From assembly GCA_002269645.1 (NCBI GenBank), contig NIVC01000048.1, positions 1 to 64,000 of the forward strand: a DNA stretch of 64,000 nt, read 5' to 3'. This document shows, piece by piece, positions 16,294-63,862 of this stretch (positions are counted from its first letter, which is position 1; the number at the start of each line of letters is the position of its first letter). The notes beneath the pieces are model-generated. The model was not told the DNA's origin and did no database searches. It saw only the letters and a list, made by a program, of their open reading frames with translations. The stretch comes from Macrostomum lignano. Taxonomy: Eukaryota. The position numbers were made by a program, and so were the translations under genes.

Positions 16294-17606
16294 AGGGCTG
16301 GGCAGTCGTGAGAATGTATTTAAAAAACCAGTCAGAACTATCAGAAAACACGATAACTGTACTAGTTGGTAATGTAATCTCCCCTTGCGTTAATTACAGC
16401 TTGGCAATGGTCAACGAGTCGCTGAACCTCTCTTTTCAAGCAATCTTTGTCAAGGCCTCTTGCCCATTGCAACGCAGATTCTCGAACTTTATTGTGGTCG
16501 CTGAACACTCGCCTGGAGAAATCAGTCTTCATCCAACTGAACAAAAAACGGTCGCACAAATTGAAGTCTGGGCTGTAGGGACTCTGAAACACCAGCTGAA
16601 CTCCACGGGACTCCATGTACTGCTGCACAGAACGAGCCACGTGAGGTCGCACATTGTCCCACTGCCAAAGAATATCCGAGAGTACGCCATAGGTCTCTGG
16701 TGTGCCGAATGAACTCAACTATGCCATTTGCATCAACAGTTTGCTTTGGGGCTGTGGATTCAATGGAGAAGCGCTTGTTTGGAGTAAAAGCAACCAGAAG
16801 CATTGTCTTTGCATTGCCGACTGAGTGCTTGACAACCTGGAGCCGATTATCCGGCCAAGCCAGCACCTGTTGTTTTGCTTTGTGCCAGTGTTGTTCAGGT
16901 ACACCCACGTCTCATCCTCCACCGCGTACTTGTCGCAAAAGTTTTCCATGCCCTCGTTGTAAAAAAGCCTGCGAATTTGCGTGGCACAATTGTTGCGAGC
17001 AGTCTTGTTCTCCTCGGATAGAGCATGCGGAACCCAGACAGCAGAAACGTTTCGAAGGTGCAAATCCTCAGTCAAAATTTCGTGCACTGTTGTTTTTCCA
17101 ACTTCCAAAAAGGCAGGGAGGTCTCGGACACTAACTTTTGGATCCTCTTCAATAAGAGCTCGGCAGGTTTCGATCAGTTCCGCTGTCCTTGCTGACCGTG
17201 GCCGGCCAGTCCGAGGAGTTGAGACCGGGGGAAATGCTTCGTCACGGAACTTCGAATACCATCCGTAAACCGTTGACTGACCTGGTGCAGCATCTCCATA
17301 AACTTCGAGCAGCTCGTCATGACAGCTGAGAGCGGAGATTCCAAGACGGTATCTAGCATAGGCATAACCCTGGAAGTCTTCCATTTTGAAGAACTCGCTG
17401 TCAAAATTTTCAAGCTTGATCACCGCGTTGCATTTGCTATTGAGCACTTTATACTGAGCTCGCCCCTGCCCCGAATTTTGCTACTAGAATAACAAGAATT
17501 TTCACCATAGACATCTATGAGTCTATTATTGAAAATTTCTGTGTGCCACGTAAACAGCTTGCTGCTTTCTTGCTTAATTGACACATTCTCACGACTTTCC
17601 GGACAG
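16294..17606 (-). mobile_element. Mariner (DD34D) DNA transposon, decayed
   Basis: Inverted 14-bp TIR core AGTCGTGAGAATGT at 16304-16317 and 17583-17596; TA follows the right end (17607-17608); outer part of the left TIR is degenerate. Confidence 0.9.
16362..17384 (-). pseudogene. Mariner transposase (frameshifted)
   Basis: WVPHAL, EDETW, WDNVRPH and YSPDFNLCD with 34 residues between the last two Asp. Confidence 0.92.
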
Positions 17607-50822: not shown

Positions 50823-52119
50823 AATTATTTACGATAAATTGCGTAATTTGCGTTGCAGTGGCTGCTGAATTCTCATAAGCAAAGCACTTAAAAAGCTAAT
50901 GTCTGCTCGAGTTACAATTTAAATATTCTTTCCAAAAACGAACACTCTATTGAGTGGGTACTGCGCGCATGTTTGCCGTTTGGCGGTTTTGATACAAATT
51001 TGCGAAACTATTATTGCGCGCAGCACCGCCCACAAAATGTGCAGTGAAAGTCCCTAAAAGTGTGAGTAGCATTGATTAACCTTTCACAGTGTAAAAAAAT
51101 TTACAGTGTAAAAAATGGTGTAAAGTTTCCATAAAAATATCTTTGTTTTTAATTCTCATTGCACTGTGTGAGGTTAGTTAAATGCTCGACGCTTTTTGTT
51201 TTAGACACGGCAGTATTTTTCTCATATAATAGTTTACATATTTATTGATTAATTCGTTTTTTCGGAGTTTTGAAAGCTGCTGTGCCTAATTATGGATTTA
51301 GCTAAATGATCAGGCTACCTAATGTTGGGTAACTTGTATCAAATGGCAAAGCATTTCACTGCAAAGTCGCATCCGGTGGTTTCACGTACCTGTGGGCGTT
51401 AAACTGTACATTTGAAATGCTGAATTTCTAGGAAAATCTCATTTCAAATTACAGTGAACAGAATCGGAGCGGCGAAAATTTTTTTTAACTAATTTCGTTG
51501 TTAATTGCAAGATTATTTTTCGTAAGTCCAAATGTCCAAGATATTTATTATGAGTATTATTTCTTGGACCTTAGTATATGATGTTAATTCATGTGTCTCA
51601 GTTTGATTTTTTGAGTCTATTTAATAGAACTTTGTGATTAAAAAATTAATGAATGGTAAATTATAATTAATTAGTCACATAGGACATATGTAACTAAAAT
51701 ACGTAGCATCTAAGTAGTTTACAATAGTTTAACATTTTTAGGGTTTTATGTGTTGCAAAACTGTACTCAAAGAAATCAAAAATAATTTCGAAATATTGAG
51801 CAATTAATGCACTTCGACCTGCTAAGGTGGCACACCTTCAATCTAGTTAAGACACCGATGTAGAAGCAGAGAAATATATATTCGAAATGTCGTTATGCAG
51901 CATAAATTTTTAATTTGCGCAAAAGTATATAATAACAAATTATAGAACGGAATTTAGATACAACTTAATAGATATAGATAGCTAATTAATTATGATGCAT
52001 CTATACTTATGCGAGTTACAATAGAACCAATGACAAAATTTCTAAGCATAGCATGCTAGACAAAAAGGGTTGCGGCATCTGTCAAATGGTTTAAATTAGG
52101 CTTGGCGCAGTTGCATGAC

Positions 52120-59356: not shown

Positions 59357-59806
59357 TCATTCTGCTCTCTCAACCCCCAGCTCTTTCAGCAGTATTCCTA
59401 GTTCTTTACTTGGCGCATGCAATGCAAAGCCCACCCCACCCTCGCCGTCGATCCCCAACCCCAGCTTTTTCTTACCAAAAATAACCGCCTTGACTAATTT
59501 CCGAGCAATCGACTCACGAAATCCGCTTGAAATCCCCATATTGTCGAGTCTCCTAAGCATTTCTTTGTCCCAGCGATTCTTCTCCTCAGGAAAATCTCTA
59601 TATTTAACGTCGTGCCACATGCAGACAGAGTCTAGCTCGTTCACAGGCTCATGCCCAGGATTTGGATTATTGTTTTTATCTAACTGTATTTCAAGTGGAT
59701 TCAAAGGCCCGCAATATTTATAGCCGGGAAGTGTCCAGCCTTTGTTTGGATGAGGAAGCTTTTCTATCAGTCCATGTGAGTCTAACTTACCACCAGAGCG
59801 TTGCAT
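59357..59806 (-). CDS. Parvovirus VP1-type phospholipase A2 (adintovirus/Polinton PLA2)
   Basis: LPGYKYCGPLN Ca loop and NELDSVCMWHDVKY catalytic helix; KKKLGLG tail. Confidence 0.9.
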   Translation of the reverse strand: MQRSGGKLDSHGLIEKLPHPNKGWTLPGYKYCGPLNPLEIQLDKNNNPNPGHEPVNELDSVCMWHDVKYRDFPEEKNRWDKEMLRRLDNMGISSGFRESIARKLVKAVIFGKKKLGLGIDGEGGVGFALHAPSKELGILLKELGVERAE

Positions 59807-60538
59807 TATTTTATTTAAAATTTTCTTTTTAAAAAAAATGACAGATCAGAAACTTAAAAAACTCTACTACAGCGACAAAGGATTCTTTGTAGGAAAAAAT
59901 GCAGTCACCAAACTCACAGAACTAATTAAGGAACCAAAAGCTAAAGTAGAAAAGTGGCTCTCTAAGCAGGCTGTCTTTCAAGTCTATTTCCCACCAGTTT
60001 AATTTACAAGACCTCACTTTAACATCTATAAACCTAACGAGGCACAACAAGCAGACCTTTTGTTTCTCCCCAATGACTCGGGCTACAAGTATGCTCTTAC
60101 AATTATAGACATTGCCTCCAGATATAAGGAAGCGAGACCGCTTAAGACGAAGAAGTCAGAAGCAGTTGCAGCCGCCCTCCAAGATATTTATAAAAACTCA
60201 CCCCTTAGTTACCCTGAAATCTTTATGACCGACCCGGGTAAAGAATTCTATGGGGCAGTCAAATCCCTTATAGAAAAGAAAAATACAGAGATTCGCTATG
60301 GCAGAACTGAGCTCCACAGAGACCAGGCTTTTGTGGAAAGATTCAATCTAACTCTAGCCAAGAGGCTATTCACTAAGCAGACAGCTGAGGAGCTGAAACT
60401 AAAAAGTGGCCAATACTATACCAAGTGGACAGAAAGACTCCCCACTGTTATAGAGCAACTGAACAATGAAGTCACACGCATGACTGGATTGAAACCGTCC
60501 CATGCAATTAAACAAGACACTGTCGAACTTAAGTCATC

Positions 60539-62146
60539 TCAAGCGGAGGCAAGCAAGCTGGTTGGCACATAGCAGGTGCCATAGAAGCGAAACAGAAAGT
60601 TGGCAAGCTGGCTGGGGTCATGCGCTCTGGACAGCGGGTCTGCGAGCAGCTGGAAGCGGCCAGGCACATGGTGCGCGCGGACGATGATGTCGCGTTGAAT
60701 GCAGGTCAGGGCGACGCGCTTCTGCAGGTCGGCAATACCTTGGTGCTTGGGGGAGCCAGAGTTAATGATGCCGCAGGCGGCGGTGCTGTCAGTGTAGACT
60801 GCAACCGAGCAGCCGCTGAAGGCTTCTTGGTGCTGCAGAATCGCAACCAGCGGGGCGGCGCACTCCTTGAGGTTGATGTGCAGCTCCTTGAACGCGCCAT
60901 CACAGTCGGACTGCCAGTCGATGTAGAGCCAAACCGGTTCTCTGTCGACGAAATGCAGCACAGCACCGCCTCCAATGTCACAGGCGTCAGACTCAATCGC
61001 TCCAGCCGGCCGACGCGAGGGCCAGGCAGCTCTAGGCGGCAGCGTGCTCAACGCGGTCATCCACCACCTCAGCTGCGGCTGGAGCTCCTCCGTGACGCCG
61101 ACCCTGTCGGACGGATGCGCCAGGCTGTTGACCAGCTCGATCAGCGGCCGCAGGAAAGTTCGCCCGTGCTGGGCGGCAGTGCACAGGTGGCTGAGGTGTC
61201 CGAGCAGCTTCTGCAATTCCGCCTTGCACAGGCTCCTCCGCGAGAGGCAGGTGTCAAGGAGAAGCTGAAGCTTTTCGGCTTTGTCGGCTGGGAAGGAAAG
61301 ACTGGCTTGCACGGTGTCGATGTCAAAGCCGAGGAATCGCAGCTTTGTCGTCGGCGGCACCGACTTTTTCTCGTTGATGGTGAAGCCAAGCCTGGTGAGC
61401 AGGTTGCGCAGCTCGTGGTAGGCCCTGTCGCACTCGGCTTTCGTCCTGGCCATGACGAGGAAGTCATCGATGAAAACGACGGTTGCCAGGAACCCCTTGC
61501 GACACATCATTCGCCGGGCCGCTTGCGTGAGGCGATGGAAAATGCTGACGGAGGCTCTGCTGCCGAATGGTAACCGCGTATCCACCAGGAAGGTTGAGCA
61601 GCCGTTGCCGAAGTCCCAGTGGATGCCGGTGGCTTGGTAGCACTGCGGAGAAATTGGCACGCTGCGGTAGGCTGACGCGATGTCCACCTTTGCCATAAAC
61701 CAGCCGGGCTGCATCATCCTGACGGCCTCGTCGACGGAGGTGAAGCGGAGACGCCGTTGTTGGGCATAGTGATCGTTCAGGCTGCAGCCGCGAGGGACGG
61801 AGCAATCATGGATTAACCGGATGCCGGAGCTGTCTTTCGGAATGGCTCCCAGCGGACAGACCATCGCAGGCTTGTCCACGACTGGGACGTACCTCCCGAG
61901 CCGGATTTCTTCTCCGATAACAGCTTGGACTTGGTCGCGATTCCGGTTGACGGACTGGTAGTTGCTGCAGAGACACGGCGTAAAGTCGAAGTCATCGACA
62001 ATGGAGAAGCCGCTCTCGATGCCGTCGAGAATAAAATCAGCGTCGGGGTCGCCAACAAGCTCGGAGCGCCAGGCGTCGATGCAGAGATCGCCCACTGGCT
62101 GCGTCAGATCGGACATCCGCACTGGAGGCTTGACGATGCAGGGCAC
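60539..62146 (-). CDS. DIRS/Ngaro-type reverse transcriptase-RNase H, open frame
   Basis: RLIHDCS, KVDIASAYR, LPFGSRAS, FIDD, FLGFDID, ESDAC, HINLKE, YTDS, HVPG..ADPLSR. Confidence 0.93.
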   Translation of the reverse strand: MPCIVKPPVRMSDLTQPVGDLCIDAWRSELVGDPDADFILDGIESGFSIVDDFDFTPCLCSNYQSVNRNRDQVQAVIGEEIRLGRYVPVVDKPAMVCPLGAIPKDSSGIRLIHDCSVPRGCSLNDHYAQQRRLRFTSVDEAVRMMQPGWFMAKVDIASAYRSVPISPQCYQATGIHWDFGNGCSTFLVDTRLPFGSRASVSIFHRLTQAARRMMCRKGFLATVVFIDDFLVMARTKAECDRAYHELRNLLTRLGFTINEKKSVPPTTKLRFLGFDIDTVQASLSFPADKAEKLQLLLDTCLSRRSLCKAELQKLLGHLSHLCTAAQHGRTFLRPLIELVNSLAHPSDRVGVTEELQPQLRWWMTALSTLPPRAAWPSRRPAGAIESDACDIGGGAVLHFVDREPVWLYIDWQSDCDGAFKELHINLKECAAPLVAILQHQEAFSGCSVAVYTDSTAACGIINSGSPKHQGIADLQKRVALTCIQRDIIVRAHHVPGRFQLLADPLSRAHDPSQLANFLFRFYGTCYVPTSLLASA

Positions 62147-63522
62147 GGGAGCGGGCTGAGCGAGGCAGTTAAAAGCAGGAGGGGTAAAATCGGTTTCGCG
62201 CGCCGTGTCGGCGCGCTTGCTCAGTTTTTTGCGTGATTTTGCTCGGAGTGGCTGCCCTCACAGATTCGGCAGGCATGGAGGAATCGGCAGTTGCTCCTCA
62301 TGCAGCCGTTGGTGCTGTTGAAGGACAAGCACAGCTCGCGGCCTGAGGATGTCCGCGGACCCATGACGCGGCTCTTGTTGCTAGGCTGGTTTCGCTTGGC
62401 TGTCTGGTTGTACTGGTCCGTCTTAATGCTGAGCAGGTGCCTGATCGACATCTGGGCGCAGTCTTTGCCCCAGCGAAGGCTGTTGGCTGCGCGGTGCTGG
62501 CGGTAGTCATGGTCGAATCTGATCACCCGGTGCGCTGGGAATCTGTCGAATAGCTCGGCCACCTGGACATTGTACTGGGCGTAATCTTTGACTTGCTCAG
62601 TTGTGCTGTACACTTGGCCCTTGCTGGTCACCTGCGGCGCTGTGTCTTCAAGTATCTGAAGCAGGACCTTCATACTGCCGGCGAACCACTGCCCAATTGT
62701 CATGCCGTCCAGCTTGGTCGTCGACTTTTTGAGCACGAGGCCGCCAGAGCTGCCCCTGGTGAGCAGCTCATCAGCCTGGCCTGACAGATCATCGACAAAG
62801 TCTCTGACGAGTAGACACGGCTGCCCGACCGGCCGGGGTTGGCTCTAGCGGTGACGGGGCCTGTTGGGTTGATAAGTTCAGCGAAAAGATTTTGCTGCTC
62901 ACCTGATTCTGTACGAGCAGTCACGACGGCGCGTTCCCGAAGCTCTCGCTCGCGTGTTTGAAGCTCTAGGAGCTGCAGCCGTTTCTGCGCCCGCCGAATC
63001 TCGCCGTCCAGGTCCGCCTCCCGTGGTCCCGGCCTTGGTCTTGGAGCTCCTCCTGCGCACAGGGCGATGCCGATGCCGATGTCAATGCCGATGTCCCGCC
63101 GTCTTGAAGCTGTGACTGCCCCTCGTGTTGTCTCAGTCTGGCTTGCAAGGCCGACTTATTGCCTGCGGTTGAGAGGCCTCGGCTACCCAGCTCACTCTTG
63201 AGTTGTTTGACTGTTAGTCGGTCTACACGATGCATGATAGCCAGAGCCAGAAAGTCGCAAAGAAAATTTTACGAGCCAAAAAAATTTTACGAGCCAAAGC
63301 GCTCTCGCAGCGCGCACGAGAGAGCGTGAACGCACAAATAAAAGGGGGCCGACGCAACCCACCCCCAACCCAACACCCCCGCCTGCCGGCCGGCACCCAG
63401 CACCCCACCTTGCGGCAGGGATGCACACGCGCGGGCCGCACGCACAGACGGGCGGAGGGGGCGGCCCCGTCGGCTAAACACGATTACAGAGCCGGTTAAA
63501 ACCGGCCCCTGAAATCGCAACC
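60542..63522 (-). mobile_element. Ngaro/DIRS-type retroelement lacking a tyrosine recombinase, flanked by a 32-bp direct repeat
   Basis: ORF1 plus RT-RNase H; identical AAACAAGACACTGTCGAACTTAAGTCATCTCA at 60510-60541 and 63523-63554. Confidence 0.88.
62221..63235 (-). pseudogene. ORF1/gag of the Ngaro-type element with N-terminal SAP domain (frameshifted)
   Basis: LTVKQLKSELGSRGLSTAGNKSALQARL (SAP); QWF..DY..Y..FDHDYR..WG; CLSFNSTNGC..CRFLHAC Zn finger. Confidence 0.8.
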
Positions 63523-63862
63523 AAACAAGACACTGTCGAACTTAAGTCATCTCATAGAACAGACACCTCAAACTACCCTAAGCTTCCAGGAGTTGAATCA
63601 CCATACATACTGACAAACTCTGAGCTTCTACGCTTTTTATATCTACCTGGAGAGCTAGAGAAGGACACTAAAAGAAGAGCTACAGATCCATACTTCAGCC
63701 TTGATGTACATAAAATAGACAGACATTTTACCTCCGACTCTGGTGACTATTACTTTTTATCTCAGGCCTTTAACCCTAAATCCCCCACGCGGTCATTCAC
63801 TAGAGCTGAACTCCTAGTGATACCAGCTGACACGGAAATTAATTAAAATATTAAAACAAAAA

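What the first reader, a model, noticed from the sequence alone, without database searches (positions are those of the whole stretch)
60510..63554. Recombinase-less Ngaro/DIRS-type retroelement with a perfect 32-bp target duplication
Seen: a 2981-bp insert with ORF1 and an uninterrupted 535-aa RT-RNase H is bracketed by an identical 32-mer, and removing insert plus one copy restores the host integrase frame. There is no tyrosine recombinase ORF, no poly(A), no LTR or TIR, and the RT-RH stop codon is supplied by the target duplication itself. Established: DIRS/Ngaro elements integrate through a YR and do not normally make TSDs; retroviral-type integrases make 4-6 bp TSDs. Inference: either a YR-independent integration route for this RT family (staggered-nick priming or use of another element's nuclease) or a one-off capture at a DNA break.
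Basis: partly seen in the sequence, partly recalled or inferred. Interest (0 to 1): 0.85.

Follow-up and report, generated by a model that had tools for sequence, protein, structure and literature searches.

The report
Truncated Ngaro retrotransposon with 32-bp duplication
A broken-off, recombinase-less piece of a Ngaro-type retrotransposon sits inside the integrase gene of a Maverick/Polinton virus-like element, flanked by an exact 32-bp duplication of the host gene, which means it probably entered at a chromosome break rather than by the family's usual recombinase route.

Summary
An exact 32-mer (60510-60541 and 63523-63554) brackets a 2,981-bp, 60% GC insert in 37-38% GC DNA. The insert carries, on the minus strand, a 287-nt leader, a gag-like ORF1 (SAP domain and CCCH finger, broken at least twice) and an open 535-codon RT-RNase H frame whose stop codon lies in the duplication. 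It has no recombinase, poly(A), LTR or TIR.

The RT belongs to the Ngaro lineage. Relatives at 36-43% identity have the canonical gag / RT-RH / tyrosine recombinase (YR) layout with A1...B1A2...B2 split repeats and no long flanking duplication. The nearest relatives also carry a YR. The window copy stops inside the conserved tail of the RT ORF, so "recombinase-less" reflects a 3' truncation, not a new YR-less lineage.

The host gene is a Maverick/Polinton-type integrase, and both flanks map collinearly onto uninterrupted homologues.

Most likely this was a YR-independent, break-associated insertion. Either reverse transcription was primed at a nick, or an incomplete cDNA was captured at a break with 32-nt staggered ends.

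One coral (Oculina) Ngaro copy that lacks its last repeat and is flanked by a perfect 67-bp duplication hints that this may recur. Copy number in the source genome and read support could not be checked.

The parts
60510..60541 (.). Left copy of the 32-bp target-site duplication. It is host integrase coding sequence (KQDTVELKSS); its last three bases serve as the stop codon of the insert's RT frame on the minus strand.
63523..63554 (.). Right copy of the 32-bp target-site duplication, identical to the left copy and read in the same codon phase of the host integrase.
60542..63522 (-). Ngaro-derived insert of 2,981 bp at 60.4% GC: leader, ORF1 and RT-RNase H. It is 3'-truncated, with no YR, no split direct repeats and no poly(A).
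63236..63522 (-). 5' leader of 287 nt. It is GC-rich and strongly structured as RNA (z -3.7), and it holds an 18-nt tandem duplication. Its length fits the A1 repeat-plus-leader of relatives (inference only).
   Evidence: lengths in relatives
62221..63235 (-). ORF1, gag-like, and broken: at least two frame changes or stops are needed to read it through, whereas the nearest relative L003 has one 339-aa ORF. It has an N-terminal SAP domain (63122-63226) and a C-terminal CX8CX4CX3H finger (62275-62331).
60542..62146 (-). RT-RNase H frame of 535 codons with no internal stop. RVT_1 lies at 61319-61741 and RNase H at 60752-60997. The frame is cut off inside its conserved C-terminal tail.
59838..63846 (+). 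Host gene: a Maverick/Polinton-type rve integrase. It is broken by this insertion (insert plus one duplication copy) and by one in-frame stop. Both flanks are collinear with uninterrupted homologues.
59357..59806 (-). Neighbouring host-element gene: a parvovirus-VP1-type phospholipase A2-like ORF, a gene class described in Polinton/adintovirus virion modules.
   Evidence: PMC8502044

Best explanation
This is a defective, 3'-truncated copy of a tyrosine-recombinase (Ngaro) retrotransposon from a lineage whose Gag carries a SAP domain. It is inserted in the integrase gene of a Maverick/Polinton (adintovirus-like) element in an animal genome. It did not arrive by the family's normal route, which is recombinase-mediated insertion of a circular copy and leaves no duplication.

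Instead, an incomplete copy was joined at a chromosomal break whose two strand cuts lay 32 nt apart. That copy ran from about the element's 5' end to a point at the RNase H / recombinase boundary. Filling in the two single-stranded overhangs produced the 32-bp duplication.

Two versions fit equally well. In (a), a free 3'-OH at a nick primed reverse transcription at an internal site of the Ngaro RNA and copied it to its 5' end, much like target-primed or endonuclease-independent LINE insertion. In (b), a ready-made incomplete cDNA was captured by end-joining.

Shown: the anatomy, the truncation, the family, and that the duplicated 32-mer is host sequence. Inferred: the break, the stagger and the template.
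For: - The truncation is inside ORF2. The window RT ends 34 residues after ADxxSR, against a median of 52 in 100 homologues. The closest relatives continue with a conserved motif and then a YR.
- There is no YR, no A/B repeats and no poly(A).
- The 32-mer is host coding sequence. It aligns to integrase homologues and is matched twice by one homologue, at residues 163-177.
- Of the nine relative loci that have flanking DNA, seven have canonical split repeats and no long flanking duplication. L005 has only a possible 8-nt flank match. The window's insertion signature is therefore atypical for the family.
- The literature describes recombination at a 3-bp junction without TSDs for the related DIRS1-like YR elements (PMC3266345).
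- A second atypical copy exists. L004 (Oculina patagonica) begins exactly at the A repeat, ends 33 nt after A2 without B2, and is flanked by a perfect 67-bp duplication that resembles B1 no better than chance.
- Extrachromosomal linear cDNA and trans-acting proteins are documented for the related DIRS-1 (PMC7192593).
- Insertion of 3'-truncated, tail-less copies at pre-existing lesions is documented for L1 (PMC1920257).
Against: - Documented endonuclease-independent L1 insertions lack TSDs and usually delete target DNA (PMC1920257). A clean 32-bp duplication is therefore not their usual signature.
- Nothing in the sequence shows what made two nicks 32 nt apart.
- Junction microhomology is weak: 4 of 6 bases beyond the duplication, p about 0.04.
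- Whether the insert's 5' end is the true element or RNA 5' end is unknown, because no full-length copy of this lineage was available.
- The best database RT is only 45% identical, so copy number in the source genome is unknown.
- No reads were available, so an assembly error cannot be excluded.
Confidence: 0.6

Rival explanations
1. A true YR-less Ngaro-derived lineage (gag plus RT-RH only) that regularly inserts by staggered-nick priming or by borrowing another element's nuclease, making long duplications.
For: - The RT frame is fully open over 535 codons.
- YR-less derivatives do exist in the family: L006 comes from a 24-member cluster.
- A second copy with a long flanking duplication exists (L004).
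Against: - The RT frame ends inside a conserved tail motif rather than at a natural stop.
- ORF1 is broken.
- L006 keeps the canonical A1/B1A2/B2 repeats and has no long duplication.
- L004 still encodes an open YR.
- The nearest relatives carry a YR.
- There is no second copy in the window.
Confidence: 0.12
2. Replication-based template switching (FoSTeS/MMBIR type). A stalled fork copied 3 kb from a chromosomal Ngaro copy and returned 32 bp behind its point of departure, duplicating the 32-mer.
For: This mechanism produces a templated insertion flanked by a short duplication of the target without any element-encoded nuclease (established knowledge of the mechanism). The truncated 3' end falls at an arbitrary internal position.
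Against: The other end of the insert lies 287 nt upstream of ORF1, where relatives have their A1 start. In the analogous L004 case the insert begins exactly at the A repeat boundary. That is unlikely for a random template switch into chromosomal DNA.
Confidence: 0.1
3. A retrocopy of a Ngaro transcript made in trans by a LINE's endonuclease and reverse transcriptase (processed-pseudogene type).
For: Variable-length duplications of tens of bp are typical of target-primed reverse transcription (PMC1920257). The window is rich in transposable elements.
Against: - There is no poly(A), microsatellite or LINE 3' tail at the 3' junction; the longest A/T run near either end is 4.
- The copy is 3'-truncated and apparently 5'-complete, the opposite of the usual LINE signature.
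- No LINE sequence adjoins the insert.
Confidence: 0.07
4. Assembly or gap-closing artefact: the retroelement piece and the duplicated 32-mer were introduced when contig ends were joined.
For: An exact duplication of a round k-mer-like length (32) at both sides of a repeat-derived insert is the kind of pattern mis-joins can give. No reads were available to me.
Against: Both junctions are clean, and the host frame continues in phase on both sides. A comparable structure with a 67-bp duplication is present in an independent chromosome-level assembly (L004).
Confidence: 0.06
5. An ordinary YR-mediated Ngaro insertion that later lost its 3' part by deletion.
For: Deletion derivatives and copies lacking B2 occur among relatives (L006 and L008).
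Against: A YR insertion would not create the 32-bp duplication. A later deletion would also have to end exactly at the host boundary, leaving the second 32-mer and the host frame untouched.
Confidence: 0.03

Closest known systems
Ngaro retrotransposons inserted in endogenous mavirus-like virophages (EMALEs) of Cafeteria burkhardae (Hackl et al. 2021, PMC8547959)
   Same: In both cases a GC-rich Ngaro-type element interrupts an AT-rich Maverick/virophage-related virus-like element, sometimes within genes. Both have an ORF1 / RT-RH gene order.
   Different: The Cafeteria elements are about 6 kb and carry a YR and A1-[ORFs]-B1A2B2 repeats. Their truncations are at the 5' end, and no flanking duplication is reported. 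The window copy is 3 kb, 3'-truncated, lacks a YR and repeats, has a 32-bp duplication, and lies in an animal-type Maverick integrase.
Canonical animal Ngaro elements recovered here (L001, L005, L007, L009, L011, L012)
   Same: They share a homologous RT-RNase H (36-41% identity), a gag with the same CX8CX4CX3H finger, and the same gene order.
   Different: They have a Cre-like YR, split direct repeats, and no long flanking duplication.
Oculina patagonica Ngaro copy L004 (CM126647.1, in a FANCL intron)
   Same: It starts at the 5' repeat, lacks the normal 3' terminus, and is flanked by a perfect long duplication of AT-rich host-like DNA (67 bp against 32 bp).
   Different: It keeps an open YR and A2, and only B2 and most of the spacer are missing. 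All three of its ORFs are open. Its RT is only 38% identical to the window's.
Endonuclease-independent (non-classical) L1 insertions (Sen et al. 2007, PMC1920257)
   Same: These are 3'-truncated retroelement copies without a poly(A) tail, attributed to use of pre-existing DNA lesions.
   Different: They involve a different RT class. They were defined by the absence of TSDs, usually carry target deletions, and are mostly also 5'-truncated.
YR-less Ngaro deletion derivative L006
   Same: It has gag plus RT-RH with no recombinase.
   Different: It retains A1, B1A2 and B2 and has no long duplication, so it can still use a recombinase supplied in trans.

Membership tests
Ngaro (tyrosine-recombinase retrotransposons, DIRS order) | RT-RNase H belonging to the Ngaro lineage | tested here: met
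   RVT_1 scores 8.5e-17. There are 279 homologues, the best at E 4e-128. Those with flanking DNA have the Ngaro architecture. No tree against named DIRS/PAT/VIPER references could be built, because the tools hold no such reference sequences.
Ngaro (tyrosine-recombinase retrotransposons, DIRS order) | Tyrosine recombinase ORF downstream of RNase H | tested here: not met
   tblastn with two relatives' YR proteins gives no hit in the window. In relatives, ORF3 is present and its profile matches Cre recombinase at 7.7e-9, including the HxxR...Y region.
Ngaro (tyrosine-recombinase retrotransposons, DIRS order) | Split direct repeats A1 ... B1 A2 ... B2 | tested here: not met
   The only long repeat around the insert is the 32-mer in host DNA, and there are no internal or terminal repeats. 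Seven relative loci have these repeats. The definition is from PMC4157794 and PMC13465315.
Ngaro (tyrosine-recombinase retrotransposons, DIRS order) | No methyltransferase domain between RNase H and the YR | tested here: inconclusive
   That region is missing from the window copy. In relatives the YR follows RT-RH directly, for example L002 (RT to 1858, YR from 1897) and L004.
Ngaro (tyrosine-recombinase retrotransposons, DIRS order) | Gag-like ORF1 upstream of RT, often with a zinc finger | tested here: met
   ORF1 is homologous to the gag of L003, L001 and L004 (E 3e-20 to 1e-16) and has a CX8CX4CX3H finger, but it is broken at least twice.
Ngaro (tyrosine-recombinase retrotransposons, DIRS order) | Insertion by site-specific recombination, without target-site duplication | tested here: not met
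   The insert is flanked by an exact 32-bp duplication of host coding sequence. The no-TSD statement is for DIRS1-like elements (PMC3266345).
DIRS1-like / PAT elements | Methyltransferase domain; inverted terminal repeats plus an internal complementary region (DIRS1) or split repeats (PAT) | tested here: not met
   Pfam finds only RVT_1 and a weak RNase H. There are no terminal inverted repeats. Relatives have no room for an MT domain.
LINE-mediated processed retrocopy | 3' poly(A) or LINE-type tail next to the duplication; usually 5' truncation | tested here: not met
   The longest A/T run within 60 nt of either end is 4. The copy is truncated at the 3' end, not the 5' end.
LTR retrotransposon / retrovirus-like element | Long terminal repeats, an rve integrase of its own, 4-6 bp duplication | tested here: not met
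   The insert has no LTRs and no integrase. The duplication is 32 bp.
Maverick/Polinton (host element of the interrupted gene) | rve integrase together with protein-primed PolB, packaging ATPase and capsid genes | tested here: inconclusive
   The window ends 150 bp after the integrase. A homologue of the integrase (59% identity) lies next to DNA_pol_B_2 and Pox_A32 ATPase genes in L010. A PLA2 gene of the kind described for adintoviruses is adjacent in the window.

The most novel reading that the evidence does not exclude
Ngaro-type elements have a second, recombinase-independent way into chromosomes. Reverse transcription would be primed at widely staggered nicks, or linear cDNA captured there. 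The resulting copies would be complete at the 5' end, cut short at the 3' end, and flanked by unusually long perfect duplications (32 bp here, 67 bp in Oculina). The pathway would recur across genomes and might be steered to AT-rich Maverick DNA by the SAP-domain Gag.
Probability: 0.3. Interest if true: 0.65.

Novelty: new member of a known kind. Interest (0 to 1): 0.4.

Why it matters
YR retrotransposons are the least understood retroelement order, and their integration is assumed to depend wholly on the recombinase and to leave no duplication. A clean case, and possibly two, of a 3'-truncated copy with a long perfect duplication shows that their RNA or cDNA can also enter DNA by a break-associated route. 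That matters for annotation: such fragments will be missed or misclassified by repeat-structure-based finders. It also matters for how these elements decay and spread.

The finding extends the "Ngaro inside Maverick/virophage" nesting seen in a protist to what looks like an animal genome. As a single locus without read support or a genome-wide census, it remains a curiosity rather than a demonstrated pathway.

Tried and rejected
- Other copies in the window: blastn and tblastn of the insert and the RT found only the insert itself.
- Other copies elsewhere: the best RT in 5.8 billion proteins is 45% identical and the window's own protein is absent. Exact scans of metagenome contigs for a 24-mer from the insert's 3' end and for the 32-mer gave 0 hits. 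A scan of viral contigs with the RT alignment found no relatives. Copy number, sister termini and empty sites could therefore not be examined.
- Is the 67-bp flank repeat of L004 really the element's B repeat? Its local similarity to the B1 region is no better than shuffles (960 of 2,000 reach the observed score). This idea was rejected.
- L008 as a third example: it lacks B2 but has no flanking duplication above chance. It was not counted.
- RNA families or a ribozyme in the insert: Rfam gave only a chance-level miRNA hit at E 0.46.
- Pfam on the relatives' ORF3 gave at best weak SAM-like hits. A profile search against solved structures was needed to confirm Cre-like recombinases.
Architecture of homologous loci was used instead.
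- Short palindromes inside both duplications were considered as nick or hairpin signals. They were dismissed as expected in AT-rich DNA (my estimate, not a formal test).
Full report
**1. What is in the sequence**

The 32-mer AAACAAGACACTGTCGAACTTAAGTCATCTCA occurs exactly twice in the window, at 60510-60541 and 63523-63554. Between the copies lie 2,981 bp at 60.4% GC, set in 37-38% GC DNA. The repeat can be extended to 38 nt with two mismatches. Four of six extra matches has a chance probability of about 0.04 by my binomial estimate, so this is at most a hint of 4-nt microhomology.

The insert's genes are on the minus strand:
- a 287-nt GC-rich leader (63522-63236) that folds much better than shuffled controls (z -3.7) and holds an 18-nt tandem duplication;
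- a gag-like ORF1 (63235-62221) with an N-terminal SAP domain (Pfam 3.5e-13) and a C-terminal CX8CX4CX3H finger;
- an RT-RNase H frame of 535 codons (62146-60542) with no internal stop.

The RT's TGA stop is at 60539-60541, the last three bases of the left 32-mer. ORF1 is not intact. Its start and its stop are in different frames, and at least two frame changes or stops are needed to read it through. The nearest relative has a single 339-aa ORF1.

There is no recombinase anywhere in the window (tblastn). No A or T run longer than 4 lies near either end. The insert has no terminal direct or inverted repeats and no Rfam family.

**2. The host gene**

The flanks encode an rve-type integrase (59838-63846, Pfam rve 1e-6). 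Its homologues are 260-280-aa proteins, some named from the coral Oculina patagonica and the anemone Actinostola. One homologue (P0125, 59% identical) lies in locus L010 between a Pox_A32-type packaging ATPase gene and a protein-primed DNA polymerase B gene. That is a Maverick/Polinton setting.

The window also has a parvovirus-VP1-type phospholipase A2 ORF next to the integrase (59357-59806). This gene class has been described for Polinton/adintovirus virion modules (PMC8502044).

Without joining the halves, I checked continuity in two ways:
- Both 32-mer copies are read in the same codon phase, as KQDTVELKSS.
- The uninterrupted L010 integrase matches the left flank with residues 26-177 and the right flank with residues 163-263. 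The overlap is the duplicated stretch.

So the 32-mer is host coding sequence and a true target-site duplication, with no loss of host DNA detectable at the protein level. The integrase additionally carries one in-frame stop.

The rest of the window holds Gypsy-type retroelement genes, a mariner-type HTH, a Helitron Rep-like ORF and a STIM1-like EF-hand exon. That is a transposon-rich animal genome. A cnidarian source is only an inference from the named homologues.

**3. What the insert is related to**

A search of 5.8 billion proteins gave 279 RT homologues. The best are 41-45% identical, and no identical or near-identical protein was found.

I recovered twelve loci, nine of them RT relatives with flanking DNA. 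Six are canonical (L001, L005, L007, L009, L011, L012). They have gag, RT-RNase H and a third ORF, an A repeat before gag, and B1-A2-spacer-B2 after ORF3. None has a long flanking duplication. L005 shows only a possible 8-nt flank match.

A profile of six ORF3 proteins matches Cre recombinase (7.7e-9), including the HxxR...Y catalytic region. The recombinase follows RNase H directly, leaving no room for a methyltransferase domain. This is the published definition of Ngaro (PMC4157794; PMC13465315).

The closest relatives of the window RT also carry a recombinase:
- L002 has a YR directly after the RT.
- P0003 from Macrostomum is fused to a phage-integrase SAM-like domain.
- L003 shares the SAP-domain ORF1.

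**4. Why the window copy lacks the recombinase**

In an alignment with eight homologues, the window RT stops inside the conserved C-terminal tail. Relatives continue there with a conserved motif and then the recombinase. It has 34 residues after the ADxxSR motif, against a median of 52 in 100 homologues.

The copy is therefore truncated at its 3' end, at about the RNase H / recombinase boundary. The "stop codon supplied by the duplication" is the point where the open frame runs into host DNA.

A YR-less derivative does exist among the relatives (L006). It keeps A1, B1A2 and B2 and has no duplication. The window copy has none of these repeats. "Recombinase-less" is thus a property of this copy, not evidence for a new kind of element.

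**5. How it got there**

The literature describes DIRS1-like YR elements as recombining a circular copy with the target at a 3-bp junction sequence, without creating duplications (PMC3266345; PMC7192593). A 32-bp duplication next to a truncated end cannot come from that reaction. It also cannot come from a later deletion, which would have to stop exactly at the host boundary.

The simplest reading is a break-associated, recombinase-independent insertion at cuts staggered by 32 nt, followed by fill-in. Either a nick's 3'-OH primed reverse transcription at an internal position of the Ngaro RNA and copied it to the RNA's 5' end, or an incomplete cDNA was captured by end-joining.

Supporting background is documented. 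DIRS-1 makes linear extrachromosomal cDNA and its proteins act in trans (PMC7192593). 3'-truncated, tail-less L1 copies are attributed to pre-existing lesions (PMC1920257). Those L1 events, however, lack duplications and usually delete target DNA, so the match is to the principle, not the signature.

**6. A second case**

Locus L004, from a chromosome-level assembly of Oculina patagonica and lying in a FANCL intron, holds a Ngaro with open gag, RT-RNase H and recombinase frames. Its A1 and A2 are identical at 288 of 288 positions.

It begins exactly at the A repeat and ends 33 nt after A2. It has no B2, and it is flanked by a perfect 67-bp duplication of 21% GC DNA. That 67-mer resembles the B1 region no better than chance (960 of 2,000 shuffles), so it is not a displaced B repeat.

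L004 shares three things with the window copy: a 5' end at the element's start, a non-canonical 3' end, and a long perfect duplication. L004's 5' end falls exactly at the repeat boundary. That argues against random template switching into chromosomal DNA and for an intermediate with a defined 5' end.

One further locus (L008) lacks B2 but shows no duplication and was not counted.

**7. Rivals**

- A regular YR-less lineage is disfavoured by the truncation point, the broken ORF1 and the YR-bearing relatives.
- LINE-mediated retrocopying is disfavoured by the missing tail and the 3' rather than 5' truncation.
- Replication template switching remains possible for the window copy, because its 5' end cannot be verified as the element's terminus.
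- An assembly artefact cannot be excluded without reads, though the in-phase host frame and the independent Oculina case speak against it.
- Canonical insertion followed by deletion does not explain the duplication.

**8. Comparison and verdict**

The closest published situation is the set of Ngaro insertions in endogenous virophages of Cafeteria burkhardae (PMC8547959). The nesting is the same: a GC-rich Ngaro inside an AT-rich Maverick-related element. Those copies, however, are full elements with a YR and split repeats.

The window feature is a new and divergent member of the Ngaro family (SAP-domain Gag, at most 45% RT identity to anything searched). It is preserved as a defective 3'-truncated copy with an atypical insertion signature. 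It fails three defining Ngaro features as an element: the recombinase, the split repeats and the absence of a TSD. It is therefore best called Ngaro-derived rather than a Ngaro element.

Interest is moderate. The locus on its own is explained by known kinds of process. Together with the Oculina copy, it raises a testable possibility of a recombinase-independent entry route for this retroelement order.

Noticed in passing
L004:6641-11431 (Oculina patagonica CM126647.1, FANCL intron): A Ngaro copy with open gag, RT-RH and YR frames and identical A1/A2 (288/288). It lacks B2, ends 33 nt after A2, and is flanked by a perfect 67-bp AT-rich duplication that is not B-like.
   Followed up: partly
L006:5097-10102: A Ngaro derivative with no recombinase (RT stop is followed about 295 nt later by B1) that keeps canonical A1/B1A2/B2 repeats. 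Its RT cluster has 24 member sequences, so it may be a trans-mobilised non-autonomous form.
   Followed up: partly
window:63122-63226 (-) and L003:40-1059: A SAP (DNA/scaffold-attachment) domain sits at the N-terminus of the Ngaro Gag in the window lineage and its nearest relative. No paper in the searched library pairs 'SAP domain' with Ngaro. It might bias insertion towards AT-rich DNA such as Mavericks (speculation).
   Followed up: partly
window:59357-59806 (-): A parvovirus-VP1-type phospholipase A2-like ORF (HD..Y motif present) lies beside the Maverick/Polinton integrase. This gene class is already described for Polinton/adintovirus virion modules.
   Followed up: partly
window:44757-50600 (+): A 1,947-aa Helitron Rep-like ORF (DUF6570, Helitron_like_N). 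Its C-terminal third is a proline-rich extensin-like repeat with strong negative GC skew (48-51 kb). No PIF1 helicase domain was reported by Pfam.
   Followed up: no
window:4113-7872 (-): Gypsy-type LTR retroelement genes in order: gag, aspartyl protease, RT-RNase H and rve integrase.
   Followed up: no
window:33982-34764 (-) and 16719-17447 (-): A STIM1-like EF-hand exon, which points to an animal host genome, and a mariner/Mos1-type HTH ORF.
   Followed up: no
window:28000-29500: A stretch with extreme AT skew (0.97) and several long overlapping ORFs on both strands without Pfam hits. It is probably a low-complexity or tandem-repeat region.
   Followed up: no
window:35000-44000 and 51000-52000: AT-rich blocks (26-41% GC) without any ORF of 150 aa or more. 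Their relation to the AT-rich Maverick segment at 58-64 kb was not examined. No L010 Maverick protein other than the integrase matched the window.
   Followed up: partly
window:63236-63522 (-): The insert's 5' leader folds far more stably than shuffled controls (-139.6 kcal/mol, z -3.7) and starts with a perfect short hairpin. No Rfam family matches it.
   Followed up: partly
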